In this document: positions 60 through 63,123 of the stretch, piece by piece
Layout: each line of letters starts with the position of its first letter
How positions within the stretch are numbered: the first letter of the stretch is position 1
Source of the DNA: Mytilus trossulus
Taxonomy: Eukaryota
NCBI RefSeq assembly: GCF_036588685.1
Contig: NC_086381.1
Coordinates: 81,034,001-81,098,000 of the forward strand
Length of the DNA: 64,000 nt
Reading direction: 5' to 3'
Made by a program: the position numbers and the translations under genes
Notes under the pieces: model-generated
The model's database searches: none
Told to the model about the DNA's origin: nothing
Seen by the model: the letters and a program-made list of their open reading frames with translations, nothing else

Positions 60-149
60 TGCCATATTCCTGACTTGGTAAAGGACATTTCAGCCCAAAC
101 AAAATGGTTGGTAAACCTGGTTTCATGGCTCGCAAAAACTTATATGGCA
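60..149 (-). repeat. Fragment of interspersed repeat family D with a partly deleted twister-like motif
   Basis: Minus strand reads ...CCTTTACCAAGTCAGG..., closed by TGCCATAT/ATATGGCA; similar to 36985-37080. Confidence 0.55.
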
Positions 150-1861: not shown

Positions 1862-2163
1862 TAGTTATCAAAGTTACCAGGATTATAATTTAGTACGCCA
1901 GATAAAATTCAAAGTTTTATAAACAGGAAATTTATAAAAATGACAAAAAAATTGATATTCATGTCAACACCGAAGTGCTAACCACCAGCAGTGGCATCGA
2001 CCCAGTGGTGTAAATAGTCCTCACAGGTACCAGGATTATAATTTAGTACGCCAGACGCGCGTTTCGTCTATATCAGACTCATCAGTGACGCTCATATCAA
2101 AATATTTATAAAGCCAAACAAGAACGAAGTTGAAAAGCATTGAGGATCCAAAACTCCAAAAAG
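1862..2163 (-). mobile_element. Hammerhead-bearing retrozyme/PLE-derived repeat, partial tandem
   Basis: taccaggattataatttagtacgccaga occurs twice (about 1875-1902 and 2028-2055); related copies at 16.7, 37.2, 40.0, 50.5, 57.4 and 63.1 kb. Confidence 0.75.
2048..2091 (-). ncRNA. Minimal type I hammerhead ribozyme, intact core
   Basis: RNA GCGUCA CUGAUGA GUCU-gauau-AGAC GAAA CGCGCG UC^UGGCGU; stem I GCGUCA/UGGCGU; palindromic stem III. Confidence 0.85.
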
Positions 2164-5100
2164 TATAAGTGTCTTGTAAAAAAAACGTAAATTTTGGATA
2201 GTTTGAAACCTTTTGTCTATATATAGGATATATTGTTATTGTTTCATTGATGCGATAAAGACTTACATTGTTCAACACCATTATTGACATGTAGTTTTGT
2301 TGTATAACCTTAAAAAATACACTGCGAACACAACATGACGACTTAACACAGAACTACACGTATGGTGTCTTCGTGTCAAAATATTATTAATTAGTTGCTG
2401 ATAAAGCAGTAGTATTGTGTATATTAACATAAACCAGTAACATACTATATTACAAAATAGAGCAAATGCAACAGGTCAAATTAAAACAAAACTAATAACT
2501 AAAATAGATTTCAATGCAGTTTTAGTCTTTTAGAAACTGCTTTACTGTGTGTGAATTTTAAAAACATAGTTAAATTTATTGTTTAAACTGAAATAACAAT
2601 AATAGTGTTTTTTTCCAACTCCACTACAGATAAATGCTTAGCATTTTTGATTCGATAGGAATAATAACCACGAAATACAGAAGAAAAAACTTCAATCACA
2701 CACAAGATCAGTATGAACATATGTAATTAAAAACACGATCTTTCAATCCATTTAACACATGTGTTTTACTATTTCATTTTGAGTTTTTCAGTCCCTTGCG
2801 GTTAAAGTTTTTCTGAACAGAACTAAATAAATGAATAAATGGCCTATGTACATATCATGAATGATGTTTATATAATCACGTTTTTTTTAAAGACATACTT
2901 TAGAATGCATATTTTCTGTATAAAATTCGACAAATATCTTTAGTTCAGAAATGTGAAGATATTAAACTTCCAAAATGCCTCAGAATATACAATATGAACT
3001 AATTGAATAATACAATAGATTATATAATAATACATACATGATGCAAATGGTACGCAGTGAGGTAATAAACATATGAAAAACAAGATTTTTACTCCCATTT
3101 TTATCATACTAATTCAAATTATAAGACCCAAAAACCTCAATCAACCGGCTTTTATATCATTTAAATAGGGTTTCTAGTAACATGATATCATAATTGATTG
3201 CTATTCAATGTAAGATATCGTACTAAAGAAAATTTTAAAAACCAGTTTTAGGCTTCACAATTGATTATTATCTCATTACTTCTCGTTCAGTCGGAACGCT
3301 ATATCAAATTATATAATTATAGACAGGGAAACTGGTAGTTGAACCCGTTCTGTATTTCAATTTCATTTGTTTTGTTTGTCAATTTCTCTTATCGTGTAAC
3401 TAATCAATGTATTGATTGCCTGTTTTCATTTAATGTAAAAAAGAAACAATATGTCTTCATATATACTAATTTGTCAATAGTTTCGGACATGTCAGAAACA
3501 AACCCACAATATATTGGATAGTTGAATATACTTATAAACTTCACAAAAGTATCATCAGTTCAGTAGTCACAACTACGGTGCTGGCATGATGTATAACAGG
3601 ATTTTTCAAAAATTATTTATTGCATGTTATATTATTAAATTGTAACAGCAAACTATTTTTTAAACTACCGCAAGCAACTTGGTCCTATTTTCATGTCCTT
3701 TTTGGGTCAGATAGTTTTTAAATGATTTTGTGAAAAGACTTCGTTGACTTTCAAACACTTGGCTTTGGGAGATCCTGATTAAGTCAATATAAAGAGGATC
3801 TTCAGTTGCATGTCCTTGGTAATGTATTGGTTTTTTTTGTAGCTGTTTTCGGTCACTGTAATATATTTGGGGTCAGTAATATACATGACACACGAGCCAT
3901 ATAACGCTAGGATATATATAATATGATTTAAAATGTGTAAGCTAGAGTTGACGCCGACTTGACATTTGTTTTTACATCAAAAAGTTTCCAGAGTTTTTAA
4001 AAAGTTTCCTACAGACTTATGTTTAAAGGAGCGCTAGCTACGAGATATATAAAAAAAGAATAAAATATCATGTGTTACGTTCAATCAATTATGAAAGTGA
4101 AATAGTGAAATAATAATTCGCCTTTAGCAGCCATTATGATCGTCCATTTTTTATTGACATAAAAAGATATATGATTCTTTGGCGAAACATATTTGCAAAT
4201 GTGTTAATTTTAACTGATGTTTATTATATAATATTTGTTCTTATGTAGTACTGTTTACCACTGTCCCATAGTAGGGGAGAGTTAACGCCTTCAAATTTGT
4301 CGGTATGTACATATCCTAAGCTAGTACCCTGGAACCATGTGGTAGCCGATTATTGCTGCATATCACATCTGTCATATAGGATCTTTTCTTTATGTATTGT
4401 AACTCTAACTATTGGGTTTATCATTGTTGCAGGCCGTAAATTGACATATAGTTATTAATTGCCTTGTAATATTTCATCAGGTGGAGAGTATTTGTGTTGG
4501 CAATCATTCCACATCTACCTAATTTTATAATACTCGGATTCTTTTACAGGATCTGCTTACCCTTCTGGAGCAACCTAACTTTCTTACCATTACTAAATAT
4601 ATCAAGAACAGTTTTAAACAAAAGATTATCTACATACAGATAGATTTAACTACGAATGATACATAGTCATTAGGTGGGTATTTTTCTTTAGTATTTGAAT
4701 TCAAAAACAGATTAAGACTTGATTTGTTTGTTTTTGATTTTTTTGATTTGTATTATATATTGCACTTCCAACGATATTTATGCAGCGACATCATATATAA
4801 CAATACTACCACTTTTTACCTCACTGATACGGTGATCGTAAAAAGACGGAAATATGTATTATATCAAAATTAAAAACCTTTCTATTTCGACCAACATAAG
4901 TTCATTGTATCTAAGGGGTATTGTCATTATATATTAAGGCTAAAAACTGTATTTGATAATTAATTCTTTAGAAGTCAAGTATTGACGTTTGCAATACTGT
5001 TTTTTTTAATGAAAAAGGACTTAGAAATAAAACAATATTTTGTTCCGTGTCAAGGTTATAACTAGAAATAGTTTTGATAGAAACAAACTTTGTTAACTAT

Positions 5101-5346
5101 GCTTAAACAATATACGTGATTATTTTTTCTTACGAATACACTTCAAAAGGACTATGTTCGGTTTGTGTTATCTTTTTGTTTTATTTTAAATCAGAAGGCT
5201 GAAAAGAGATATCATGTGAAGTTTTTTGTTGATATGAAGTTGGGTTTTTTCTGTAACTATTCTTCAAAAATTTAAAACACTTTTGATACTAATCAGCGTA
5301 TTTTGCAACACGTCATATTTTATTTTTTCACACTGTCGTCGTTTAA

Positions 5347-5738
5347 GGATGTTCGCTACTATGTTTAAAAATAACAAGCTATTTAAAAGACTGTTATAAA
5401 TTCAAAGAATATGAATAAGTAAACTAAAAAAGCAAAAAAAAAATGGAGGGTCCCTGTGCTTGTTTTTCGAGATAAAAGCCGTTGAAAATTTGGCGGGAAA
5501 TAATTCTCTCTAGATTTTTCTTTCACTTAACATTGGCACCTTTTTTGTTTAAAAAACTATGAAAAAATATCAAGGATTTAATAAGATTTTGAACTATGGC
5601 TTTTTAAATAATATGTAATAAAAATATGAAAAGAAAAGTAGGGGTAAGTGGGCAATTTTTTTTAATGTTAATACATTGATAAAATCAGAGGATTCCGAAA
5701 ATCTGGCAACAATTCAAAAAGTAGAGGAGCAAACATCC
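5347..5738. mobile_element. Non-autonomous DNA transposon with TTAA TSD (Kolobok/piggyBac-like MITE)
   Basis: TTAA|GGATGTTCGCT ... AGCAAACATCC|TTAA; the homologous unit near 10815 lacks it. Confidence 0.75.
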
Positions 5739-5942
5739 TTAACAGGGATCTACAGGAGTACTATTTTGACATTATTATAGTAGCACCACATTCCCCATTA
5801 TCTATGCCATCAAAATAAAAAAAAATATACTTGTAGCACGTTGAGTAAAATAGTTATGTACATTCAAAATAAAACTTTTCAAACGTCTTACCTCGCTTGG
5901 ATACTTATGGTAATCACTTGATTGATGTGGCATTATTATAGA

Positions 5943-6080
5943 CTAGAAAATGGAACGAGGTATATGTCAAAAAGACAGCAACCCGAGCAAAGATGAACAG
6001 TCCAAGGTCACCAATATGCCTTCATTTCAGCGAAAAACTACGCCATCAGATGCGGTACTCATCTTGCCCCTAAACAATAA
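5943..6080 (-). mobile_element. Degenerate 3'-end fragment of the Naiad-type element
   Basis: Reverse complement resembles about 36625-36765. Confidence 0.55.
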
Positions 6081-6539
6081 AGTACATCAATTCAGCGATT
6101 CGGGAAACTTAAACACGATACACGTCAATGTCGAATAAACACACATATATTTGAATGCTTCTACAAACGACAGTTTTAAAACATGATATTTTCCATATTT
6201 TGAAAATAAATCCCAAAACGGTCCGGTGTTTAAAGTTTTTTTCATTCAAATGTCTTGTATATAATAGAGCTATCACTAAATGTACTTTCACGTGAATGAT
6301 AACTTGTCACAATTGATTCAGATATTTTCAATACGGTCACATTATAGATATGCAAATAAATGCAAAATTTTAATCTGTTGACAGTCTAATTAAGAAAGCA
6401 TTAATTTAGTATGTGGTTACCAGACATGAATCACATACATCGTCATTTGTGAAGATTTTGTTCAACAGCGACCAACCAACTCTTAGTTTAATGATTTTCT
6501 TGTTAGCAGCAAAGTTTGGCAGCAAATGTCGAATCTGGA

Positions 6540-7990: not shown

Positions 7991-8215
7991 AAAATCACAA
8001 AAATACTGAACTTAGAGGAAAATCAATTCGGAAAGTCCATAATCACATGGCAAAACCAAATAACAAAACGCAAGACAAGAACTGTCATATTCCTGACTTG
8101 GTACAGGCATTTTCAAATGTAGAAAATGGTGGATTAAACCTGGTTTTTTAGCGCTAACCCTCTCACTTTGATAACAGACTCATCAAATTCCACTATATTT
8201 ACAAGATATAACATA
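7991..8215 (-). repeat. Interspersed repeat family B with twister-like motif (8081-8178)
   Basis: Matches copies at 15.5, 31.4, 39.3 and 63.6 kb; core GCCTGTACCAAGTCAGG. Confidence 0.75.
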
Positions 8216-15449: not shown

Positions 15450-15715
15450 ACTATTTTACCTAGTATGTCTGTTTTGTTCACGCAACGTTGTAAATATAAT
15501 GAGATTTGATGCGACTGTCATACATGTGAGAGGTTTAGCGTTATGAAACCGGAATAAATTCACCATTTTCTAAATTTTAAAATGCCTGTACCAAGTCAGG
15601 AATAAAACAGTTGCTGTCCATTCGTTTGATGTGTTTTATCATTTTATTTTGTCATTCAATTTGGGACTTTGCGTTTTGATTTTTCCTCGCAGTTCAGTAT
15701 TTTTGTGATCTTACA
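15450..15715 (+). repeat. Repeat family B with twister-like motif (15513-15612)
   Basis: GTGAGAGGT...CACCATTTT...AAAATGCCTGTACCAAGTCAGG. Confidence 0.7.
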
Positions 15716-24100: not shown

Positions 24101-27100
24101 CGGCCTCAAACTCATAAGACTTGCGTTAGATATAAATTCCAGTATATTGAATTATCTAACGCAAGTCTTCCATGTTGCTGTCGCTACGTTTATTCAATCT
24201 CGAAAGTGGTGTGGTCTTTTACTTCATTTGTATTTAAAAGGAGTAGGTTCAGTAAGACCCCTTTTTGGCCCTAAAATATAGCAGTTTTACAAAATTGTGA
24301 AAATGTAATCTTTTAGCTATTTATTGGAAAGTGGAATGCTTCTGCGACACAAATCTGGGCTGTTTTTTTACAATACAATGCACATATATCAGGTACTAAC
24401 ATCATTAAGTCATGATAAATTACTAAAATCTTCATAATTTTAGCATTTTCGTTAAATTTTAGACGGTTTCCGTCTTAAATGAAAGTGGCCGCATTCGTGT
24501 TCATTTCTAATATTGAAATGTAAGTTGTATTTGATGATAATACATAACATATATAAAGGTTGAGGATGAACACGGATGCTGCCACTTTCATTTTTGACAT
24601 AAACCATCTGAAAAGTGACGTTTTTTTTGCATATTTGAAAGATTTTTCATTTTTAAGCGTGATTCGGAGTGTTTTTTATGACTTAATCAGTTAAATCTTT
24701 CAAATAAATTAATTGAATCATTTGAAATTGACACTTACGTGTTTAAAAAGTTCCAAAATATTTCGTTAGATGAACCTGAAATTTGGGGCCAAAATCGGCC
24801 CTTACCGGACCTACCCCTTTACTTAATCATTTAATCGTAAACGTTGCCATTTTTTTGCTTTTCGTAATCTTTCTTAGTCAAACCTGTTTTATTTAATAGA
24901 TAGAGTAGCTAGAAGAGCATAATTATGTCTTATTTTATGAAAAGATCTGCCATTAATATATGAGTCAATGACAGTTTTCAAAAGAAAATTAAAACTTTAT
25001 TATCTAAATGGTTCGATGTCATAAGACCAAATATACCGATTTAGCCATTCAAACATCATACCCATATGCTTAAAATAACATAATGACATTGATTTCTGGA
25101 GTAAAACCTGATTGATAAAACAGTTGTTAATTTGTGTTAACAAAATTTATTCATCATGTGTCAATTCCTAGAAACATTAAACTAAATACCTGTTTGCAAG
25201 ATCAAGTCGTATCACAAAAGGATCACTAAGACTTGATAACACAGTGAAATTGCTTCCGTCAAGATTACACCTTGAGAGTGTGTGTGAGAAATAATCAACC
25301 CAGTATATATGGTCATTGGTTGGATCAACAGCTATTCCTGATGGAAATGATAATGACTGGATAACTGTATGCAATTTAATGTTCTTTGAGGGATATGCAA
25401 ATCTATATAAATCAAAAAATGTTATTCAAACTAAAAACATTTATTAACTGATCTTTTATACTAAAAACTCTCTAATTCATTTCAAACAAAACAGTTTACT
25501 GAATCTGTTAACTTATGATAGGGATCTATTGTGAATAAAATACAATGATGAATTGATGTGTTTTCTAAACAAATAACTTGAGATTGTGCCACTAATTTGA
25601 ACGAGTGTTTAAACATATATATTTATCAACATATCAATGTAGGCTGCACATCATAGACGAGAATGTTTCAAGTACTAGTAAAATTGATATATTATAATTA
25701 GGGATATCAACGAGTACTCGAGTTTACGAGTATTGCTCGGTAGTACCGATTATCGATTACCAAAATGATACTCGACTAATTGGTTTCCTGTTAGATTTTT
25801 GTTGCTTACTTAAGTTTAAACCAAACTTTATTTTTATTGAGAGCACCTCCCGGGAAATTATATATTATACAAAATTTTAAAAAAACATTAAATATGATTT
25901 TAATCTTTCCGTTTAACTGTCATTTAAAATTCTTCCATACAGAGGTACGTGTAGGATATATGCATAAGAGCTTTCTTCCACGCTGACACGTGTATCTCAT
26001 CTCAGTCACTCCCCCACCTCTGTATCGTTAGAGCATGTATTTTCATCAGTTGCCTAACAAATTTGAGAAATATCGCTACCTCTCAGAAAAAGATGACAAG
26101 ATAATATTTAAAAAAAAGACAAATTCGGTGCACCTATCAACCCTTAGAGAATAACTGATGGCATCAGAAAGTTCTAATCATCTCCTCTTTGTTAATCATT
26201 AAACGAGTTTTTTACGGATGTTTGAGTAATAAATTTTCTAAAGATACTAATTAGTAACTTGATAAGATTAATCAGTTTACATAGTAACTACATATAGTAA
26301 ATGAAATATCAGTTATGGTATAAAATTTCTTGGACTATTAATTAGTCCTAGATAATAATGTTGAGGGTTTTTTCGATCATAAAACAACAACATACAATAC
26401 ATAAATGGGTTTACGTTTGTGTTCCTATTTAGTAAATTTTACTGAACGAGTACTCGAGTATTGCTCGATAAATTCAACAAGTAATCAATTAGTAAAACTT
26501 CAACGAGTTAACATCCTTAATTATAATGTTCCCTTTGCTTTCCTTTTTTTCTAAAAATCAGCTTTAAACTGATTACAACTTATAATTTTTTAAAGTTGTT
26601 ACATTTCAAGGCAAAGTTTTAAAGAAGATGGTTCAAGAAAATGTTTTATTTTGATCTGCACGAACTTTATACAAAAACGATTACAAAAAAAAATACATGT
26701 TCTTTTTTATAATTTAAATTATCATTGTTATACATTTTTAAGTAGTAGTTTTATATTTATAAGGTTTGACTCATTTCAACAGTTGCACAACCTGTCTTTC
26801 AGTTTTTTGCAATTCTGGGGATACGTCAAACATAAAGAAAAAATGTGTTCTGTATACCATATAATGTTATCAAAGCAAATATAACTTTGTATTGTCCCCT
26901 ACAATACATCTTGCATTGGACATGCATGTAACGGCCTTTTGTTCATTGTTCCTGTCTTGTAAATACTATTACAAGAACATTTCTTCCAAAAATGATTTTA
27001 TATAACAATCTTATTTGTATTAAAAATGTCTTGGACAATTTAGAAAGTCAGTGCAAAGCAACTATTGTAAATGAACTATTCCACTTGAAAATATAATTAT

Positions 27101-30100
27101 ATGGCGGATTTCATCGTAAGTGCTCTTGAATTTGCGACTAACATAAAACTTATATTGGAGATTCAATTGATTGCATGATGTGAGGTACGACTTTAATTAT
27201 CAAATAATTAGATATTTGTACAGGATTTTTTTCTCTCAAAAATTGCAAATTCCAAAAAAAAATGCAATTTAAATATTCTTTAACATACCTTTTAGGAAAC
27301 CCATTGTTTGGCTTCATTTGTACATTGAATAACTTAAGGGACAACAAAGGCAGGATTTTTAGAATCGATTGTTTGGTTTTCAGTTTTTATCTCTCTACTT
27401 TTAGAATTTTTAGTAAAACAAAAAAAAAAAGATTGACATGTTCCCTGCTGACTAGTTTCAAATAATATCAAGATAATTGTTTGTTTTTTTTAAATGAACA
27501 TCAAGCTATTGTGAATTGTGTATAATTCTGTCGAATATCAGTAGTTAATATCAGTATCGGTGAATACAGCCGAAACACTCTTGCAAATAAATTTATATAC
27601 ACTTTTCTTTAAAGCAAAATGCCAACGGTAAACGCTGTTCGGAGAAAACATTTTAGTTATAGATCTCGATTATCTTTTAAGTGGCCATGCGATAACTCGA
27701 TTTAATTCAATAGCACGAAGGTACTAGCAATAACATTTGAATAACACACATTCAATCGTAAATTCAGACAATATTAAATTGAATGTTAAGGCGTGTATTT
27801 GAGTTACTGTGAATACGTAATGACTATGTCGCGTTCAAATCGTATTTCTTAACATGAACAATGTTAACGTTCCATAATAAAAGTGAGTCTGAAAAATTAA
27901 AAACTGTTATTTGAAGTTAATTGACTATCTTATTCAATAAGGATTTAAGTATGTCAAGACAAAGATCTTAAAAAAGATGGTAATGTGACGGTACCCAAAT
28001 TGCACCTATTTTGACAGTTTTTTCACTTACGTTTTTTTATGTTCAATACAAACATTTCCATTTTGTGTTTATTTTGTAGCCGTGTCCTTCTCTGTTATTG
28101 AAACAGTATGTTATAAGTGTCCATTTAAAAGATAAATGAAGAGTAAGCATTGATTAATATCATATTTTGAATAATTGGATATTAATCCATGCTTACTCTT
28201 CATTTTTTTTTTAAATGGACACTTATAACATATTGTATTTGCTAATTTTAAAAAGATGACGTTTTGATGACGTCACATGTCGACGTATTGATACATTTTG
28301 CTTTTTCAGTAAACACTTCATCTGTTGATAAATATTGTGGACTTTTTGTGTATATCTAAGTATTTTACCTATCTTTAAAGACATGCATAGTATCAAATCA
28401 TAAAAATAAAAATAGTTTAGTCTCTTAGTCTAGGAAATCTTGTAATATTAATTTCCGTTGCTATTCTTGCTAAATAGGTTAAATTTGGATACTCGGTGTA
28501 ATTTGGGTACCGTTACGTTATAGGCACTAAAAAAAACATTATGATGTGCAGAGTTAAATACTTATCATGATAAGACGTGTTTCGTTTGCCTTGTAAACAA
28601 CAACGTGAAAAATCGATATATATATATATATATATATGAGTCTGAAAGATTGTGTAACAATACCGATAAATAGATGGAAAACAAAACACTAAAAAGTGTT
28701 GAATATCATTGCACAAAGATGGCCAATCGGGAGAGGTTTTGGATAAAAACACTGGGTGTCCTCCATCCAGATGGAATCAATAGAAAGAAATAATTAAATT
28801 TACAGTCTAGTGTTTATATTATTATATTCAGGATTTTGGATTAAAATCAATCGACCAAAACTTACCTGTATTATTAGTGATCTATGTTTACACCTTATAC
28901 ATTATATCTCATTATTGTTTTGTCACCGAAGAAGGCCATTTGTTGAGCCGAAATATTTGCAATTATTGTATAATTTATATCATCTGTTCAGTTTTTCCAT
29001 CTTTGTGCAATGATATTCAACACTTTTTAGTGTTTTGTTTTCCATCTATTTATCGGTATTGTTACACAATCTTTCAGACTCATATACTTTTTCCTGTTTG
29101 TGTAGTATTGTCAATTTTGATGATCCAATACCTATTAAGTTTACTGGTTGGTAGATTCTTATAGACTATATATATATATATATAAACTTAGCACAGACTC
29201 AAAGATGTGCATATTGGTGGCTGCTACTATTTACGTTACTAGTAAAATCTCATGTATCGTTACATATGTACAAACATAATCTCGATTTCGTTGTTTTCAA
29301 ATTGAAATTAAAAGAAGTTCCCTATTATAATGCAAAAGAAACAGAAATAATGCACCAGAGCTTAAAATATATCTAAAATCAAATAAAGGCAACAGTAGTA
29401 TACCAATGTTCAAAACTCAAAAATCCATGGACAAAAAACAAAATCGGGGTAACAAACTAAAACTGAGGGAAACGCATTAAATATAAGAGGAGAACAACGA
29501 CACAGCATTAAAATGTAACACACACAGAAACGGACTAAGCATTAGACAAAATCCTATGAGAATAACAAATATAACATCAAAACCCAAAACATGAATTTGG
29601 GATAGATAAGTACCTTGACACGTCTTATAGTAATGTGAATTTACACTCAAAATTAATTCTACGAAATTTCACGAAAAATCTAGGCACATTGACGGCATAC
29701 TAATGAAATCTCTTTAAGTGGAACTAGCTGCAAAATACATGAAAACAATTCCTAATTACGACTCGTTATGGTTCAATTAATAATGGAAGTGAAATAGTGA
29801 AATAACAATTCCCTTTTAGAAGCTAGTATGATTCAGTTTTGTTTAATTTAGCCAAGAAACATTGATGTTGAATTCTTCACTTCCAAGTGAACAATTCGAC
29901 CTCATTGAGTTCGTATTCATATACACATATATTTAACCCTTAGAATCAATTTTGCATGACTGGTTATTTAAAGGAATAGAATGTCAACATATCAAGTGAC
30001 ACAGATGTGAATCATTTGATTTACAGATTTGATCCACTCAAAAAAATCCTTCTTATTGAGGTAAAAATGATGATTAACATATATCTTTCATCTCTAATAT

Positions 30101-34296: not shown

Positions 34297-36130
34297 CATG
34301 TTATAACAGGAGATCTTAACATCGTTCAAGACCGAGAGTTAAAATCATTCCTCAGTAAAGGACCTAAAGATCGTCCCCCGTCAATTATTAATTGGAATGA
34401 GTGTCGTAATATCATCCACGACTCAATCCATACTTACTGTATGAAATGATAAAACGGGAAAAAGCTGACAAAAAATCTTTGGAATCTTTTTTTAATTCAG
34501 TAATGAAGATAGTTGATATACGTATTCAACATTTTAAAGAACATTTTACTATAAACAATAACCAATATAAATCTATTTCTCGTATTAAACATAAACTAAA
34601 AGAACTAGCCAAGGAATTTGTCTTTGTCCCGGCAGATAAAGCTGCTGATAATATTATTATTGTTTGACGTAAATTTTACATTGAGGTTCTGAAAAAGGAA
34701 ATCACCAATTCACCAACATTCCAACTGACTCCATTTTCAGAAAACGAAATCTGTAACAAATATAAACTTTTAGGCACCGCTTTACAAGCAGAGCCAAATA
34801 CAATGAAAGTCCCAACTATGTATTGGCTTCCGAAGCTACACAAAACCCCTTACAAATATAGATTTATTTCGTCTTCAAGCCATTGTTCAACTACTAAATT
34901 GTCTATTCTTCTTACCAGCACACTTGGTACAATTAAAAACCTGATAATAAATTGTTCAAATAAGGCCTTCGAAAATAGTGGAATAAATTACTTTTGGAGT
35001 GTCAAGAACTCGTTGGAAGTACTTGATAAATTGCATGCTTATATTGGTGATTTTGAATCTGTTCAAAGTTTTGATTTTTCTACCCTGTATACCACATTGC
35101 CTCACATTCTCATAAAGAAAAAATTCACACACCTAATTAAATGGGCATTCAAAAAATCAGAATGTGAATATATATGTTCAAACTCTTTTAGGTCATTTTT
35201 TAGTAGCAATAAACAAAAAAACTATGTTAATTGGACATGCTTTGATACTATATATACCCTTGAATTTTTACTAGATAACATTTTTGTTCGCTTTGGGTAT
35301 TCCGTATATCGTCAGATTATCGGAATTCCAATGGGGACTAACTGTGCACCACTTATTGCGGACCTGTTTTTGTATTGTTATGAGTTACAATTTATGACAA
35401 AAATAAGCAAAGACCCATCGAAACAACATCTGATAAACAAATTTAATAATACATTTAGATATTTGGATGATATTTTGGCTCTCAATAATGACGACTTCAG
35501 TATGTATATTAATGAAATTTATCCTGTTGAACTTACTTTGAATAAAGCTAATACTAACAATGACCACTGCCCTTTTCTCGATCTTGATATCTATATCACT
35601 AATGGAAAGCTGAATACAAAAATTTATGATAAAAGGGATGATTTTTCATTTCCTATCGTTAATTATCCGTTTTTAGATGGTGACGTTCCCTTGTCACCAT
35701 CTTACGGTGTTTATATATCTCAACTTGTACGATTCGCTCGTGTATGTACGAGCGAATCGTACAAGTTGAGATATATGATGATTTTAACGAGAGAAATTTA
35801 TGTATTACTGAAAAATTATTACACCAGGGTTTCCGATATCACAAACTAGTCAAAACATTTACTAAATTTTATCATCGGTATAAAGACATCATTCGTAAAT
35901 ATAGCTCAACATGCAGACTTCTAATACGTTCAGGTATTTTACATCCAATTTTTTATGGTAATATTCTTTATAAAGCACCAAAGTGTCAGTATTCACCTCA
36001 GAAACTTACAAAACCTTTGAATAGACTTATTAAGAAGGGATATAATTACGATACTGTTGTCAAGTCATTAAAGATGGCATATTTTGGCGTTAATATTGAG
36101 TCACTGATAAGGTCTTTGCATCGGAACTAA
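34297..36130 (+). pseudogene. Penelope-like reverse transcriptase ORF (putative selenoprotein), disrupted in this copy
   Basis: Motifs PADKA, YWLPKLHK, FDFSTLYT, YRQIIGIPMGTNCAP, FRYLDD, FLDL, IYDKRDDF; 1-nt frameshift near 34448, in-frame TGA 34665-67, inversion frameshift 35748-76. Confidence 0.9.
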
Positions 36131-36180
36131 ACACATTTATTCTAAAAACAGTTGTTGGTATGACACGGGTTATGTTCTTC

Positions 36181-36247
36181 TCATATATGTTATGATGGTA
36201 TGATACTAAACCCCTAAGGGGAAGGATTGTGCCTGATGTTCATATGA
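36181..36247 (+). promoter_or_regulatory. Type II eukaryotic SECIS element
   Basis: AUGAU (36192-96), helix II GGUAUGAUACU/AGGAUUGUGCC, AAA (36208-10), minihelix CCCC-uaa-GGGG, UGAU (36234-37), helix I UCAUAU/AUAUGA; 51 nt after the RT stop. Confidence 0.85.
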
Positions 36248-36442
36248 TGAAATCATAATCTTTCAGTCAGTTTAATTGAAGTCTGGAGCTGGCATGTCAG
36301 TTAACTGCTAGTAGACTGTTGTTATTTATGTATTATTGTCATTTTGTTTATTTTCTTTGGTTACATCTTCTGACATCAGACTCGGATTTCTCTTGAACTG
36401 AATTTTAATGTGCGTATTGTTATGCGTTTACTTTACTACATT

Positions 36443-36533
36443 GGTTAGAGGTATAGGGGGAGGGTTGAGATCTCACAAACATGTTTAACCCCGCCGCATT
36501 TTTGCGCCTGTCCCAAGTCAGGAGCCTCTGGCC
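36443..36533 (+). ncRNA. Circularly permuted (P5-type) twister-ribozyme-like motif without a normal P1
   Basis: P5 GGUUAGAGG/CCUCUGGCC; P2 GGGG/CCCC; L1 GAGGG and U^AA; P3 CGCA-uuuu-UGCG; P4 CCUG/CAGG; L4 UCCCAAGU. Confidence 0.7.
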
Positions 36534-36769
36534 TTTGTTAGTCTTGTATTATTTTAATTTTAGTTTCTTGTGTACAATTTGGAAATTAGTATGGCGTTCA
36601 TTATCACTGGACTAGTATATATTTGTTTAGGGGCCAGCTGAAGGACGCCTCCGGGTGCGGGAATTTCTCGCTACATTGAAGACCTGTTGGTGACCCTCTG
36701 TTGTTGTTTTTTATTTGGTCGGGTTGTTGTCTCTTTGACACATTCCCCATTTCCATTCTCAATTTTATT

Positions 36770-37420
36770 ACAGATACAGACTAAGCATTAGACAAAATCC
36801 GATGAGAATAACAGATATAACATCAAAACCAAATACATGAATTTGGGATAGAAAAATACCGTGAAACGGTGACACGTCTTATAGTAATGTGATTTCACAC
36901 TCAAATATAAGAGAAAAAAAAACTACACAACGGAAACACAACGTTAAAATGTAACACACACAGAAACGAACTGTAATATAACAATGGCCATATTCCTGAC
37001 TTGGTACAGGACATTTTTAAAGAAAACATGGTAGGTTGAACCTGGTGTTGTGGCATGCCAAACCTCCCGCGTTGATGATAAGTTAAATATAACATTAAAA
37101 TGACAATATAACATTACAGGACTACAATACAAATAAATAGGAGAACATATTAGACAAAAAAACACATAAATAATAGCTAACAAAAGGCACCAGGTTTAAA
37201 ATTCAATACGCAAAAGCGCGCCTCGTCCACACAAGACTTACCAGTGACGCCCAGATATAAAAGTTCGGAAGTCAAAACAGGTACAAAGTTGTACAGCACT
37301 GAAGATCAAAAGTTCAAAAAGGTTGTGCCAAATACGGCTATGTGTTTATGCTTGAGATAAGAACATCCTTATTATTCAGAGGAATTTATGATCTTGCAAA
37401 CATTAAATTTTATCAAATGA
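36770..37420 (-). mobile_element. Family-D composite repeat with twister-like motif (36985-37080) and core-variant hammerhead (37208-37250)
   Basis: Minus strand GCGGGAGGU..UCAACCUACC..CCUGUACCAAGUCAGG; upstream GCGUCACUGGUAAGUCUUGUGUGGACGAGGCGCGCUUUUGCGU. Confidence 0.7.
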
Positions 37421-39099: not shown

Positions 39100-39485
39100 C
39101 TATGACGTCAGACATGCCAATCAATGAATGTGTTTGTAGATAGATGTTTTTGTGTTCTGTTAAATTGTCATTTTTTAAATTTTTACACGATGATGACTGC
39201 TGTACCCATATTTTAACTATTTCATTTATTGTGTCTGTTTAGATAACGCATCACTGTAAATACAACGGAATTTGATGAGACTGTCATCGAAGTGAGAGGG
39301 TTAGCGCTATTAAACCAGGTTTAATCCACTATTTTCTACATTTGAAAATGCATGTACCAAGTCAGGAATATGACAGTTCGTGTCCATTCGTTTTTGATGT
39401 GTTTTGTTATTTGATTTTGCCATGTGATTATGGACTTTCCGAATTGATTTTCCTCTTAGTTCAGTATTTTTGTGACTTTACTTTT
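39100..39485 (+). repeat. Repeat family B with twister-like motif (39279-39378)
   Basis: P5 ACUGUCAU/AUGACAGU; palindrome TAGCGCTA; loop UACCAAGU. Confidence 0.75.
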
Positions 39486-50324: not shown

Positions 50325-50663
50325 CGAATGATTTCATTGGTATAGTACTTGAAAAATAAATGAATATGTTTTTGTAATCATAGTCCATGGCAGACACATG
50401 AGTACCTACGTGTCTACCCAGTTCAGTCACAATTTGTATTATATTATAGCCGTATTTGGCACAACTTTTTTGGAATTATGGATCCTCAATGCTCTTCAAT
50501 TTTAATCTTGTTTTGATTTATAATAGTTTAACATGAGCGTCACTGGTGAGTCTTATGTGGACGAGACGCGCGTCTTGCGTACTAAATTATAATCCTGGTA
50601 CTTTTGATAACTATTTGTGTATCAATATCAAATTTCATAATTGCCTTGTCGTGCCTTGATAAG
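50325..50663 (-). pseudogene. Disrupted paralog of YWTD exon A
   Basis: Same splice sites (tttcag|CTTATCAAGGC ... ATTCG|gtatgt); AIMKFDIDTQ..AMDYDYKNIFIYFS; 16-nt deletion, 1-nt deletion and 175-bp insertion relative to exon A. Confidence 0.85.
50438..50612 (+). mobile_element. Retrozyme insertion with core-variant hammerhead (50537-50580)
   Basis: Flanking direct repeat ATTTGT (50432-37 and 50613-18); GCGUCACUGGUGAGUCUUAUGUGGACGAGACGCGCGUCUUGCGU. Confidence 0.8.
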
Positions 50664-50789: not shown

Positions 50790-51185
50790 AAGTATAAAAA
50801 AAGATGTGGTATAATAGCCAATGAGACAAATCTCCACAATAGACCAAAATGACACAGAAATTAACAACTATAGGTCACCGTACGTCCTTCAAAAAATTAG
50901 CAAAGCCCATACAGCATAGTCAGCTATAAGAGGCCCATAAATGACAGTGTAAAACAGTCCAAACGAAACAAACTAACGGCCTTATTTATGTACAGAAAAT
51001 GAACGAAAAAAAATATGAAACACATAAACAAACGGTAACCACTGAATTACAGGCTCTTGACTTGGGACAGGCACATACATACATAATGTTGCGGGGTTAA
51101 ACATGTCAGCGGGATCTCAACCCGATCCCCCTTCCCTAACCTGGGACAGTGGTGTAATAGTACAACATAAGAACAAACCATAAAA
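50790..51185 (-). repeat. Repeat family C with degraded twister-like motif (51038-51153)
   Basis: Minus strand ACCACUG..CAGGUU..UUUAACCCCGC..GCCUGUCCCAAGUCAAGAGCCUG..CAGUGGU; end fragments also near 31.0, 51.45 and 59.0 kb. Confidence 0.7.
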
Positions 51186-52917: not shown

Positions 52918-53407
52918 TGTAATTGAGGTCTGGAGCTGGCATGTAAGTTACTGCTAGTAGTCCTTTGTTATTTTATATGTATTATTGTCATTTTGTTTAG
53001 TTTCTTTTGTTACCTATTCTGACTCGGACTTCTCTTTAACTGAGTTATAGTATGCATAATGCTGTGTGTTCGTTTTTACTTCATTGGATAGATGTATAGG
53101 GGGAGTGTTGAGATTTCAAAAACATGTTCAACCTCGATGCATGTTTGCGCCTGTCCCAAGTCAGAAGCTTATGGCCTTTGATAGTCTTGACTGATTGTAA
53201 TCTTAGTTTCTTGTGTATACTTCGGAGTTTAGTATGACGTTTATTAATACTGAACTAGTATATATTTGTGCTAGCTAAAGGACTCCTCCGGGTGCAGAGA
53301 TTCTCGTTGTATTAAAGACCCATTGGTGGTCTTCGGCTGTTGTCTGCTCTATGGTTGGGTTGTTGTCTCTCTCTTGGACTCATTTCCCATTTCAATTCTC
53401 AATTTTG
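52918..53407 (+). mobile_element. Truncated Naiad 3'-UTR copy with degraded twister-like motif (53086-53176) and no SECIS
   Basis: Colinear with about 36272-36769. Confidence 0.8.
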
Positions 53408-63079: not shown

Positions 63080-63123
63080 GCGTCACTGATGAGTCTTATG
63101 TAGACGAAACGTGCGTCTGGCGT
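63080..63123 (+). ncRNA. Minimal type I hammerhead ribozyme, catalytic core intact
   Basis: GCGUCA CUGAUGA GUCU-uaugu-AGAC GAAA CGUGCG UC^UGGCGU. Confidence 0.8.

What the first reader, a model, noticed from the sequence alone, without database searches (positions are those of the whole stretch)
36443..36533. Permuted twister-like ribozyme in a Naiad retroelement, conserved with covariation across four repeat families
Seen: the Naiad 3' UTR carries the twister core elements in P5-permuted order (GGGG-GAGGG ... UAA-CCCC-GC-P3-CCUG-UCCCAAGU-CAGG). This closely matches the rice twister core as I recall it (UAACACUGCC..CCGGUCCCAAGCCCGG..AGUGGAGGG). The same fold occurs in family B (8081-8178, 15513-15612, 39279-39378), family C (51038-51153) and family D (36985-37080, 60-149), whose flanks differ. 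Compensatory changes: P5 has a different sequence in each family but still pairs; pseudoknot T1 is CCC/GGG versus ACC/GGU (15.5 and 37.0 kb copies; the 8.1 and 39.3 kb copies have an A.G mismatch); T2 is GC/GU versus AC/GU; the first P2 pair is C-G versus U-A. Known: Naiads were described as lacking canonical hammerheads, and P1-less mini-twisters can cleave. Inference: Naiads and their non-autonomous derivatives use a twister variant to process their RNA, with predicted cleavage at U36486^A36487. I cannot confirm that this is unreported.
Basis: partly seen in the sequence, partly recalled or inferred. Interest (0 to 1): 0.92.

Follow-up and report, generated by a model that had tools for sequence, protein, structure and literature searches.

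The report
Twister ribozyme fold in Naiad retroelements
The flagged 90 bases have the fold and key bases of a rearranged "twister" self-cutting RNA. The fold is kept by matching base changes in the tails of many Naiad-type Penelope-like jumping genes, a group described as having no ribozyme. Actual cutting has not been shown.

Summary
Window 36443-36533 (+) folds as a type-P5 twister: P5, P2, GAGGG, UAA, the 2-nt T2 strand, a P3 hairpin and P4 with loop UCCCAAGU. It lies 3' of a decayed Naiad reverse-transcriptase frame and a SECIS element.

- **Rfam:** the window copy scores below threshold (23.1 bits; gathering score 37.6). Distant Naiad relatives reach 36.3 and 35.3 bits.
- **Other copies:** seven more copies lie in the window. 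The module also follows the RT gene in about 30 metagenome contigs whose RT is 37-99% identical.
- **Covariation across 26 lineages:** the catalytic G-A, the A-A after the cut site and the loop U are invariant; the loop AAG is kept in 25 of 26. P2, P4, P5 and both pseudoknots covary: 299 of 312 pair cells are paired, against 224 when partners are shuffled.
- **P1:** it is absent. Two self-complementary words, different in each lineage, stand in its place. This points to pairing between two copies, as in the dimeric hammerheads of other Penelope-like elements.
- **Cleavage:** not shown. One RNA-seq run gave no pile of read ends at U36486^A36487, only an ambiguous step in depth on one strand.

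No paper in the searched library links twister to Penelope-like elements. This scan has already made the same finding many times on other DNA of this genome. My verdict is a new variant of a known ribozyme class. The fold is well supported; catalysis and dimer dependence are inferred.

The parts
34400..36130 (+). Decayed, frame-shifted reverse-transcriptase part of a Naiad-type Penelope-like element. It carries the motifs PADKAADN and YLDD and reaches its stop near 36130.
   Evidence: Three-frame translation. More than 7000 homologues. The 96%-identical relative L052 carries CxC and DKA motifs.
36182..36246 (+). SECIS element in the 3' UTR, as expected for a selenoprotein-coding Naiad.
   Evidence: Rfam SECIS_1 at 33.5 bits, just under the gathering score of 35. 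Similar sub-threshold SECIS hits occur in five related loci.
36443..36452 (+). P5, 5' strand.
   Evidence: Pairs with 36524-33 in the minimum-free-energy fold. The flank duplex is -20.5 kcal/mol, against -6.6 for shuffled flanks.
36456..36459 (+). P2, 5' strand (GGGG).
   Evidence: Pairs with 36489-36492. Covaries across lineages.
36460..36464 (+). GAGGG. The first G is the presumed general base; GGG is the T1 strand.
   Evidence: G-A is invariant in 26 of 26 lineages. T1 covaries.
36466..36475 (+). Palindrome 1 (10 nt), at the position of the P1 3' strand.
   Evidence: An even-length, self-complementary word is present in every lineage, with a different sequence in each. The duplex is -14 kcal/mol and no hairpin forms.
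36477..36486 (+). Palindrome 2 (10 nt), ending at the base just 5' of the predicted cut.
36486..36488 (+). UAA. The predicted scissile bond lies between U36486 and A36487; the A-A pair is the general acid and its neighbour.
   Evidence: A-A is invariant in 26 of 26 lineages; the preceding base varies (U, C, G). Rfam alignment.
36489..36494 (+). P2 3' strand (CCCC), followed by the T2 strand (GC).
36495..36506 (+). P3 hairpin. It is optional: variable in length and absent in three deep lineages.
36507..36522 (+). P4 hairpin with loop UCCCAAGU. CCC is the T1 strand and GU is the T2 strand.
36524..36533 (+). P5, 3' strand.
36238..36769 (+). 3' UTR tail of the element, down to its 3' end. Elsewhere in the genome the same 533 nt are repeated in tandem arrays with a period of 829 nt.
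   Evidence: Read depth drops and loose ends appear at 36767-36770.
53099..53165 (+). Second, decayed copy of the same family.
   Evidence: R2, 45.1 bits.
51056..51131 (-). Family C copy. GAGGG is interrupted by a 2-nt insertion.
   Evidence: R2, 42.7 bits; sequence.
8092..8166 (-). Family B copy.
   Evidence: R2, 56.5 bits.
15526..15600 (+). Family B copy, decayed around UAA.
   Evidence: R2, 40.0 bits. Rfam twister-P1 at 22.9 bits with a poor alignment.
39292..39366 (+). Family B copy.
   Evidence: R2, 50.6 bits.
36995..37068 (-). Family D copy.
   Evidence: R2, 39.9 bits.
69..135 (-). Family D copy that has lost GAGGG.
   Evidence: R2, 20.0 bits, E = 0.03; sequence.

Best explanation
The module is a genuine member of the twister ribozyme fold, type P5 with an optional P3. 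It is carried in the 3' UTR, and hence in the pseudo-LTR, of Naiad-type Penelope-like retroelements.

**Shown:**
- the architecture;
- the invariance of the catalytic and loop bases;
- compensatory evolution of P2, P4, P5 and both pseudoknots;
- a fixed position and orientation 3' of the RT gene.

**Inferred:**
- It cuts its own RNA between the base that ends palindrome 2 and the invariant A-A, here U36486^A36487.
- This gives Naiads the function that hammerheads are proposed to have in other Penelope-like elements: cutting transcripts of tandem copies to unit length, which may then be circularised.
- P1 is replaced by two palindromes that can pair only with the same words of a second copy. 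The active or regulated form is therefore most likely a dimer, formed between two transcripts or between two units of one tandem transcript. Lone copies embedded in host transcripts would then stay largely uncut.
For: - **Rfam.** The window copy aligns to Twister-P5 end to end. The deep relatives L114 and L130 score 36.3 and 35.3 bits (gathering score 37.6), with E = 6e-4 and 1e-3 against all 4227 families.
- **Position and orientation.** 29 of 30 R1 hits in 80 Naiad RT loci are on the RT strand. All but three of the 29 lie downstream of the RT match; the three (L065, L066, L098) lie upstream of it.
- **Invariant bases in 26 lineages.** G-A, A-A and the loop U are invariant; the loop AAG is kept in 25 of 26.
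- **Pairing.** 299 of 312 pair cells are paired, against a shuffled mean of 224 and a maximum of 246 in 2000 shuffles. T2 pair 1 is paired in 26 of 26 with four pair types.
- **T1 and P4 on a plain MAFFT alignment.** 93.8% of cells are paired against 78.6% shuffled. The covariation score is 0.44 against 0.17 (0 of 500 shuffles reach it). Slid registers give 21-51%.
- **P5.** Duplex energy is -16.7 kcal/mol, against -7.0 for shuffled flanks.
- **Palindromes.** They are present in all 26 lineages, with a summed mean of 8.96 bp against 5.75 +/- 1.48 shuffled. They are of even length, so even the central four bases are self-complementary. Neither can form a hairpin, and the duplexes are -14 and -8.2 kcal/mol.
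- **Tandem copies exist.** L066 has modules 4181 nt apart. The genome holds arrays with a period of 829 nt.
- **Literature.** P1 is dispensable, and imperfections in P2 and wobbles in the pseudoknots are tolerated (PMC6154101, PMC11662667). The hammerheads of Penelope-like elements have a palindromic stem III loop and act as dimers (PMC6765202).
Against: - **No cleavage is shown.** In raw RNA reads, depth is continuous across 36486/7 and no pile of read starts or ends was flagged. The flag needs a fifth of local depth, and only 943 of 7621 laid reads are at least 99% identical to the window copy. Partial or context-dependent cutting is therefore not excluded.
- **Rfam thresholds.** The window copy and all relatives stay below the gathering score.
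- **T1 mismatches.** The outer T1 pair is mismatched in 8 of 26 lineages (6 U.U and 2 A.G).
- **A monomer should cut too.** If P1 is truly dispensable, a monomer ought to cleave, so dimer dependence is not required by what is known.
- **Researcher choice.** The register of P2 and T2 in my hand parse was chosen to maximise pairing, so those two counts lean towards the structure.
- **Incomplete distribution.** 11 of 35 RT loci with at least 800 nt of 3' flank, mostly those below 50% identity, show no module.
Confidence: 0.58

Rival explanations
1. A twister-derived but catalytically silent structural RNA. The double-pseudoknot fold and the palindromes would serve as a recognition, packaging or dimer-linkage element for the Naiad RT and its RNA, comparable to a retroviral dimerisation site, and the RNA would not be cut.
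For: - No read ends were flagged at the predicted site, and depth is continuous across it.
- The module is kept in the tail shared by 5'-truncated copies, where RT-recognition elements of retroposons usually lie.
- The palindromes point to RNA-RNA pairing in any case.
- 8 of 26 lineages have a mismatch in T1.
Against: - The bases that are invariant across lineages down to 37% RT identity are exactly the catalytic ones: the G of GA and the A-A after the cut.
- In the window copy the module lies about 245 nt upstream of the element's 3' end, not at the priming site.
- Canonical Penelope-like elements carry a true ribozyme at the equivalent place (PMC6765202).
Confidence: 0.24
2. An ordinary monomeric twister ribozyme. 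The palindromes would have another role, for example at the DNA or cDNA level (template switching or priming that builds tandem copies, or an endonuclease or host-protein site), or they would simply be tolerated filler in a dispensable P1.
For: - P1 is dispensable, and imperfections in it have no effect on cleavage in large assays (PMC11662667, PMC6154101).
- The core of the window copy is complete.
Against: - Filler would not stay perfectly self-complementary while changing sequence in some 19 different versions, with fixed positions right after GAGGN and right before the cut.
- An efficient monomeric ribozyme should leave a clear break in RNA-seq, and none was flagged.
Confidence: 0.14
3. 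A chance resemblance to twister in a conserved repeat segment. The segment would be conserved only because the copies are young or hitch-hike with the element.
For: - The window copy scores 23 bits, which over the whole 64-kb window corresponds to an E-value of about 1 or more.
- Many genomic copies are 96-100% identical.
Against: - Lineages that share only 37-60% RT identity keep the fold through changes on both sides of P2, P4, P5, T1 and T2.
- The independent Rfam model finds L114 and L130 at E of about 1e-3.
- Slid registers lose the pairing.
Confidence: 0.02

Closest known systems
Twister ribozyme, type P5 (Rfam RF02684, clan CL00120; Roth et al. 2014)
   Same: - The order of elements is the same: P2, GAGGG, P1 region, UAA, P2, the 2-nt T2 strand, P3, P4 with a U-NNN-AAG-N loop, all closed by P5.
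- Pseudoknots T1 (3 bp) and T2 (2 bp) are present.
- The catalytic G and A-A are present.
- The Rfam alignment runs end to end.
   Different: - There is no P1 helix in cis; two palindromes stand in its place.
- P5 is long, 9-17 bp.
- Scores are below the gathering threshold.
- Many lineages have a 3-bp P2 with a bulge.
- Activity is untested.
[quoted passage not shown] 2017; reviewed in PMC6765202)
   Same: - The host element class and the place (tail or pseudo-LTR) are the same.
- The element occurs in tandem copies.
- A helix is reduced to a palindrome, so that two copies must pair.
- Cleavage of single copies is slow or absent.
   Different: - The ribozyme class and fold are entirely different.
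- Naiads were reported to lack these hammerheads (PMC8557442).
[quoted passage not shown]
   Same: A twister-class ribozyme recruited by a retrotransposon, with an unusual P1.
   Different: - Those sit at the 5' end of LINE-like elements, cut off upstream co-transcript and promote translation.
- Their P1 is completed by target-site sequence.
- This module is in the 3' UTR of a Penelope-like element and has palindromes in place of P1.
Non-LTR retrozymes of metazoans (PMC7229834; bioRxiv 10.64898/2026.07.22.740005)
   Same: Short tandem repeats derived from Penelope-like elements, each unit carrying a self-cleaving motif. The 829-nt arrays seen here have that layout.
   Different: - Retrozymes carry hammerheads and are shown to give abundant circular RNAs.
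- No circular RNA or cleavage is shown for the arrays here.

Membership tests
Twister ribozyme (Rfam clan CL00120) | Conserved core bases: A-A 3' of the scissile bond (general acid and its neighbour), the G-A of GAGGG (general base), and the P4 loop U...AAG. | tested here: met
   All are present in the window copy. Across 26 lineages, G-A, A-A and the loop U are kept in 26 of 26, and AAG in 25 of 26.
Twister ribozyme (Rfam clan CL00120) | Helices P2 and P4, supported by covariation. | tested here: met
   P2 pairs are paired in 24-26 of 26 lineages, with up to 5 pair types. P4 pairs are paired in 24-26 of 26, with up to 4 types. P4 was also confirmed on the MAFFT alignment.
Twister ribozyme (Rfam clan CL00120) | Pseudoknot T1: three loop bases pair with the last three bases of GAGGG. 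| tested here: met
   70 of 78 cells are paired, against 33 and 51 in slid registers. The pair types are GC/AU, GC/UA and GC/AU/UA/UG. The 8 mismatches are all in the outer pair.
Twister ribozyme (Rfam clan CL00120) | Pseudoknot T2: two bases after P2 pair with the last two loop bases. | tested here: met
   52 of 52 cells are paired, against 10 of 52 when slid. Four pair types occur in pair 1. The register was chosen by me, so the count leans towards the structure.
Twister ribozyme (Rfam clan CL00120) | P1 helix flanking the cleavage site. | tested here: not met
   The two segments are not complementary to each other in any lineage; each is self-complementary instead. P1 is reported to be dispensable for catalysis (PMC6154101, PMC11662667).
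Twister ribozyme (Rfam clan CL00120) | Score at or above the Rfam gathering threshold. | tested here: not met
   The window copy scores 23.1 against 37.6. The best relatives score 36.3 and 35.3. The shortfall comes from the skipped P1 and the inserted P3.
Twister ribozyme (Rfam clan CL00120) | [quoted passage not shown] | tested here: inconclusive
   One RNA-seq run flagged no end pile at 36486/7. There is a 41% step in depth on one strand class just 3' of the site, which I cannot interpret. A biochemical test is not possible with these tools.
Naiad clade of Penelope-like elements (PMC8557442) | RT with the DKA variant of the DKG motif, and a CxC motif between EN and RT. | tested here: met
   PADKAADN is in the window's RT frame. 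MSCNCS and PADKAAN are in the 96%-identical relative L052.
Naiad clade of Penelope-like elements (PMC8557442) | N-terminal GIY-YIG endonuclease. | tested here: inconclusive
   The window copy is 5'-truncated or decayed. Pfam finds nothing in the N-terminal ORF of L052.
Naiad clade of Penelope-like elements (PMC8557442) | No canonical hammerhead; in bivalves, a SECIS element in the 3' UTR. | tested here: met
   There is no hammerhead hit inside 34400-36770 in the permissive Rfam scan, nor in 16 related loci. SECIS_1 scores 33.5 bits at 36182-36246, just under the gathering score.

The most novel reading that the evidence does not exclude
Naiads replaced the hammerhead of other Penelope-like elements with a twister that works only when two copies pair through two palindromes. 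Two unrelated ribozyme classes would then have been shaped independently into dimer-gated cutters by the same tandem-copy life cycle. The roughly 100,000 copies in this genome, and the 829-nt arrays, would be potential sources of unit-length or circular RNAs.
Probability: 0.4. Interest if true: 0.9.

Novelty: new variant of a known kind. Interest (0 to 1): 0.8.

Why it matters
- **An open point about Penelope-like elements.** Canonical Penelope-like elements always carry a hammerhead whose role is still unclear. Naiads, the most abundant clade in many invertebrates, were reported to do without one. That report was used to argue that the ribozyme may be dispensable or parasitic (PMC8557442). 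If Naiads carry a twister at the same place, a self-cleaving RNA becomes a universal feature of endonuclease-bearing Penelope-like elements. The argument then reverses.
- **A new kind of twister.** This would be a natural twister whose P1 is exchanged for intermolecular pairing, the first candidate dimer-dependent twister. It would be a striking parallel to the dimeric hammerheads.
- **Abundance.** At about one hit per 11 kb in a 264-kb sample, it would be among the most abundant ribozyme motifs in any animal genome.
- **Testability.** The idea can be tested directly with a 110-nt transcript.

Tried and rejected
- **Rfam at gathering level on the window:** no hit.
- **Rfam twister-P1 hit on the 15.5 kb copy:** rejected as a correct alignment, because P2 and GAGGG are not matched.
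- **Pfam on the RT ORFs and on the N-terminal ORF of L052:** nothing useful.
- **The look-up of encoding contigs:** Cross-species flanks came from the search for related loci instead.
- **First regex parser:** it lost true modules, and the looser version gave many false ones. I therefore used a curated list.
- **Register problems in alignments:** the MAFFT and CM alignments put UAA/P2/T2 or GAGGN in different registers for different groups. Only T1 and P4 were counted with the count of structure pairs; P2 and T2 were counted on my own parse.
- **A cis P1 between the two flanking segments:** none in any lineage.
- **An alternative hairpin:** GGGUU pairs with AACCC in the minimum-free-energy fold of the window copy. 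Considered as a conserved off-switch and rejected, because several lineages cannot form it (by eye on the table).
- **The 296-nt remainder of the 829-nt array unit:** it is not the 5' end of the element. It is a roughly 148-nt sub-repeat present twice.
- **CHiTA supplementary tables (bivalve twisters):** not held.
- **The Lunse 2017 paper:** not held.

Full report
**What is there.**
Window 36443-36533 (+) reads, in order:
- a 9-10 bp closing helix (P5);
- AUA;
- GGGG (P2);
- GAGGG;
- a 21-nt stretch;
- UAA;
- CCCC (P2);
- GC;
- a 4-bp hairpin (P3);
- a 4-bp hairpin with loop UCCCAAGU (P4);
- the other P5 strand.

This is the order of a type-P5 twister. Rfam's Twister-P5 model aligns to 36456-36522 from its first to its last position. 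It skips the P1 region and treats P3 as an insertion. The score is 23.1 bits against a gathering score of 37.6, with E = 0.0056 for 221 nt. The match is not listed at gathering level or in the whole-window permissive scan. The score of the window copy alone therefore proves nothing. The case rests on comparison with other copies and lineages.

**Context.**
- Upstream lies a decayed, frame-shifted reverse-transcriptase frame (about 34400-36130). It has the Naiad-type DKA motif and YLDD.
- A SECIS element follows at 36182-36246, at 33.5 bits against a gathering score of 35.
- The element ends at 36767-36769. There the homology to other copies stops, and RNA reads run on into unrelated AT-rich sequence.
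- A 96%-identical metagenome relative (L052) has the CxC and DKA motifs that Craig et al. use to recognise Naiads (PMC8557442). Selenoprotein-coding Naiads are described from clams in that paper.
- The N-terminal endonuclease could not be confirmed.

**Copies in this genome.**
- The 161 nt around the module occur in at least 40 scored copies at 96-100% identity. Many are spaced 829 nt apart (some 953) in arrays on two contigs.
- The array unit is the last 533 nt of the element plus a roughly 148-nt sub-repeat present twice.
- In the window plus 200 kb of arbitrarily chosen genome, my model R2 finds 23 modules at E up to 1, about one per 11 kb.
- Families B, C and D are homologous to the Naiad module over its whole length.
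- B copies share a 3' end and differ in their 5' ends, which is the pattern of 5' truncation.
- B-like and D-like modules sit 3' of RT genes in L099 and L101. I therefore read these families as tails of other Naiad lineages.

**Comparison across lineages.**
The search for related loci, run with an alignment of RT homologues, returned 80 contigs encoding RT relatives at 34-99% identity.
- A covariance model built from seven close modules (R1) found 30 matches in them. 29 are on the RT strand and, apart from the three upstream copies in L065, L066 and L098, downstream of the RT.
- The matches include L130, L114 and L128, whose RT is only about 37% identical.
- Of 35 loci with at least 800 nt of 3' flank, 24 have the module. 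All but one of those above 54% identity have it. Most of those below 50% do not (my count).
- The independent Rfam model scores L114 at 36.3 bits and L130 at 35.3 bits, E = 6e-4 and 1e-3 against all families. No hammerhead appears in 16 loci.

**Covariation.**
I parsed 26 distinct modules by hand.
- G-A of GAGGN, the A-A after the presumed cut and the first loop base U are invariant. AAG in the loop is kept in 25 of 26.
- The base before the cut varies (U, C, G; one apparent A in the table was a mis-parse of L098, corrected to C).
- P2 takes forms such as GGGG/CCCC, GGGA/UCCC, GGGC/GCCC, GACA/UGUC and UGCA/UGCA.
- T1 takes CCC/GGG, ACC/GGU, CCU/AGG, UCU/AGA, UCC/GGA, GCC/GGU and CAC/GUG. There are 8 outer-pair mismatches.
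- T2 takes GC/GU, AC/GU, GC/GC and CC/GG, and is never mismatched.
- In total 299 of 312 cells are paired. The shuffled mean is 224 and the maximum in 2000 shuffles is 246. Slid T1 and T2 registers lose the pairing.
- On a plain MAFFT alignment, the count of structure pairs gives 93.8% paired for T1 and P4, against 78.6% shuffled. The covariation score is 0.44 against 0.17 (0 of 500 shuffles), and slid registers give 21-51%.
- P5 differs completely between lineages. Its duplex energy averages -16.7 kcal/mol, against -7.0 for shuffled flanks.

Caveats:
- The lineages are related.
- The P2/T2 register was chosen by me.
- Two structural classes exist: a 4-bp P2, and a 3-bp P2 with one bulged base.

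**The P1 position.**
The stretch after GAGGN and the stretch before the cut are not complementary to each other in any lineage. Instead, each is self-complementary.
- Palindrome 1 is 6-12 nt long and always of even length. It starts one or two bases after GAGGN.
- Palindrome 2 is 6-11 nt long and ends at or next to the base before the cut.
- The words differ in nearly every lineage. Their summed length averages 8.96 bp, against 5.75 +/- 1.48 in shuffles.
- Even the central four bases are self-complementary, so a hairpin loop does not explain them. ViennaRNA predicts no hairpin for either word. It predicts duplexes of -14 and -8.2 kcal/mol, and a dimer of the whole module at -80 kcal/mol against twice -35.8.
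- Identical copies can pair in trans only through palindromes. This is the logic described for the hammerheads of Penelope-like elements, which have a palindromic stem III loop and cleave as dimers (PMC6765202).
- Tandem copies that would put two modules in one transcript exist: L066 has modules 4181 nt apart, and the genome has the 829-nt arrays.

**Does it cut?**
This is not shown. I laid one raw RNA-seq run and three sets of contigs on 36130-37100.
- 7621 reads lay on the stretch. Depth is continuous through the site, and no place was flagged where many molecules begin or end.
- The flag needs a fifth of the local depth.
- Only 943 of the laid reads are at least 99% identical to this copy, and 5513 lie on it only in part.
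- By my rough estimate, cutting in up to about a quarter of the molecules would escape notice, as would cutting restricted to tandem transcripts.
- In one strand class, depth is flat at about 390 up to bin 36460-36492. It then steps to about 550-620 from 36493 on. The other class rises by only 8% over the same boundary. This may be cross-mapping of other families that share P3-P4, so I record it as unexplained.
- Published large-scale assays say that twisters tolerate loss of P1, imperfect P2 and wobbles in the pseudoknots, but not loss of the general acid (PMC11662667). The window copy has a G.U in T2 and no P1, and is otherwise complete.

**Mechanism proposed.**
- Shown: a twister fold under selection in Naiad tails.
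- Inferred: self-cleavage 5' of the invariant A-A.
- Inferred: pairing of two copies through the palindromes gates or assists the active fold.
- Inferred: tandem transcripts are processed to unit length, as proposed for hammerheads in other Penelope-like elements (PMC6765202, PMC7761336).

The main rival is a silent twister-derived RNA used for dimerisation or RT recognition.

**Novelty.**
- Six full-text searches found no paper that links twister to Penelope-like elements or Naiads.
- Craig et al. searched Naiads only for hammerheads and do not mention twister.
- Twisters are known in LINE-like elements, at the 5' end (PMC8501958; PMC7761336).
- The library lacks most subscription journals, so I cannot exclude an earlier report.
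- Within this scan the same finding, including the palindromes, has been made many times on other pieces of this genome. My tests agree with those notes.

- Only one lay of reads was allowed.
- No consensus of the element was built. All tests used natural copies.

Noticed in passing
L001-L023 (G000 C11 around 32.245-32.253 Mb and 36.750-36.756 Mb; C15 around 6.820-6.826 Mb): Tandem arrays with a period of 829 nt (some units 953). Each unit is the last 533 nt of the Naiad tail (equal to window 36238-36767, twister module included) plus a roughly 148-nt sub-repeat present twice. The layout resembles a retrozyme, but with a twister in each unit.
   Followed up: partly
window 2048-2091 (-) and 63080-63123 (+): Type I hammerhead hits just under the Rfam threshold (33.5 and 30.3 bits; gathering score 34). 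They lie inside a repeat family that also matches 50446-50616 and 37172-37341. These are probably hammerhead-bearing retrozyme or Penelope-like repeats in the same genome.
   Followed up: no
L043 about 4700-6150 and 2900-3150 (plus strand; G000 C9 around 60.00 Mb): A satellite of 42-nt units. The unit is built from the P4 hairpin plus the 3' P5 strand of a family-C-like twister module.
   Followed up: no
window 36714-36768: Many RNA reads and contigs share only the last 55 nt or so of the element and diverge upstream of 36714/36716. Read depth peaks there. This terminal tail is therefore shared with other, more abundant element families.
   Followed up: no
window 36460-36525, run X24: In one strand class of the RNA reads, depth steps up by 41% just 3' of the predicted cut. 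The other class rises by 8%. No end pile was flagged. This could be cross-mapping or partial cleavage.
   Followed up: no
L076 3720-3786, L072 4325-4387, L063 2146-2208, L054 1913-1977, L077 2319-2380: Sub-threshold SECIS_1 hits (26.6-31.9 bits), each about 250-360 nt upstream of the twister module. The SECIS-plus-twister layout of the 3' UTR is therefore shared by several Naiad lineages.
   Followed up: partly
window 28113-28226 (-), 24460-24607 (+/-), 35706-35785 (+): Long hairpins that give weak, far sub-threshold hits to plant or insect microRNA families. They are most likely inverted-repeat elements, not microRNA genes.
   Followed up: no
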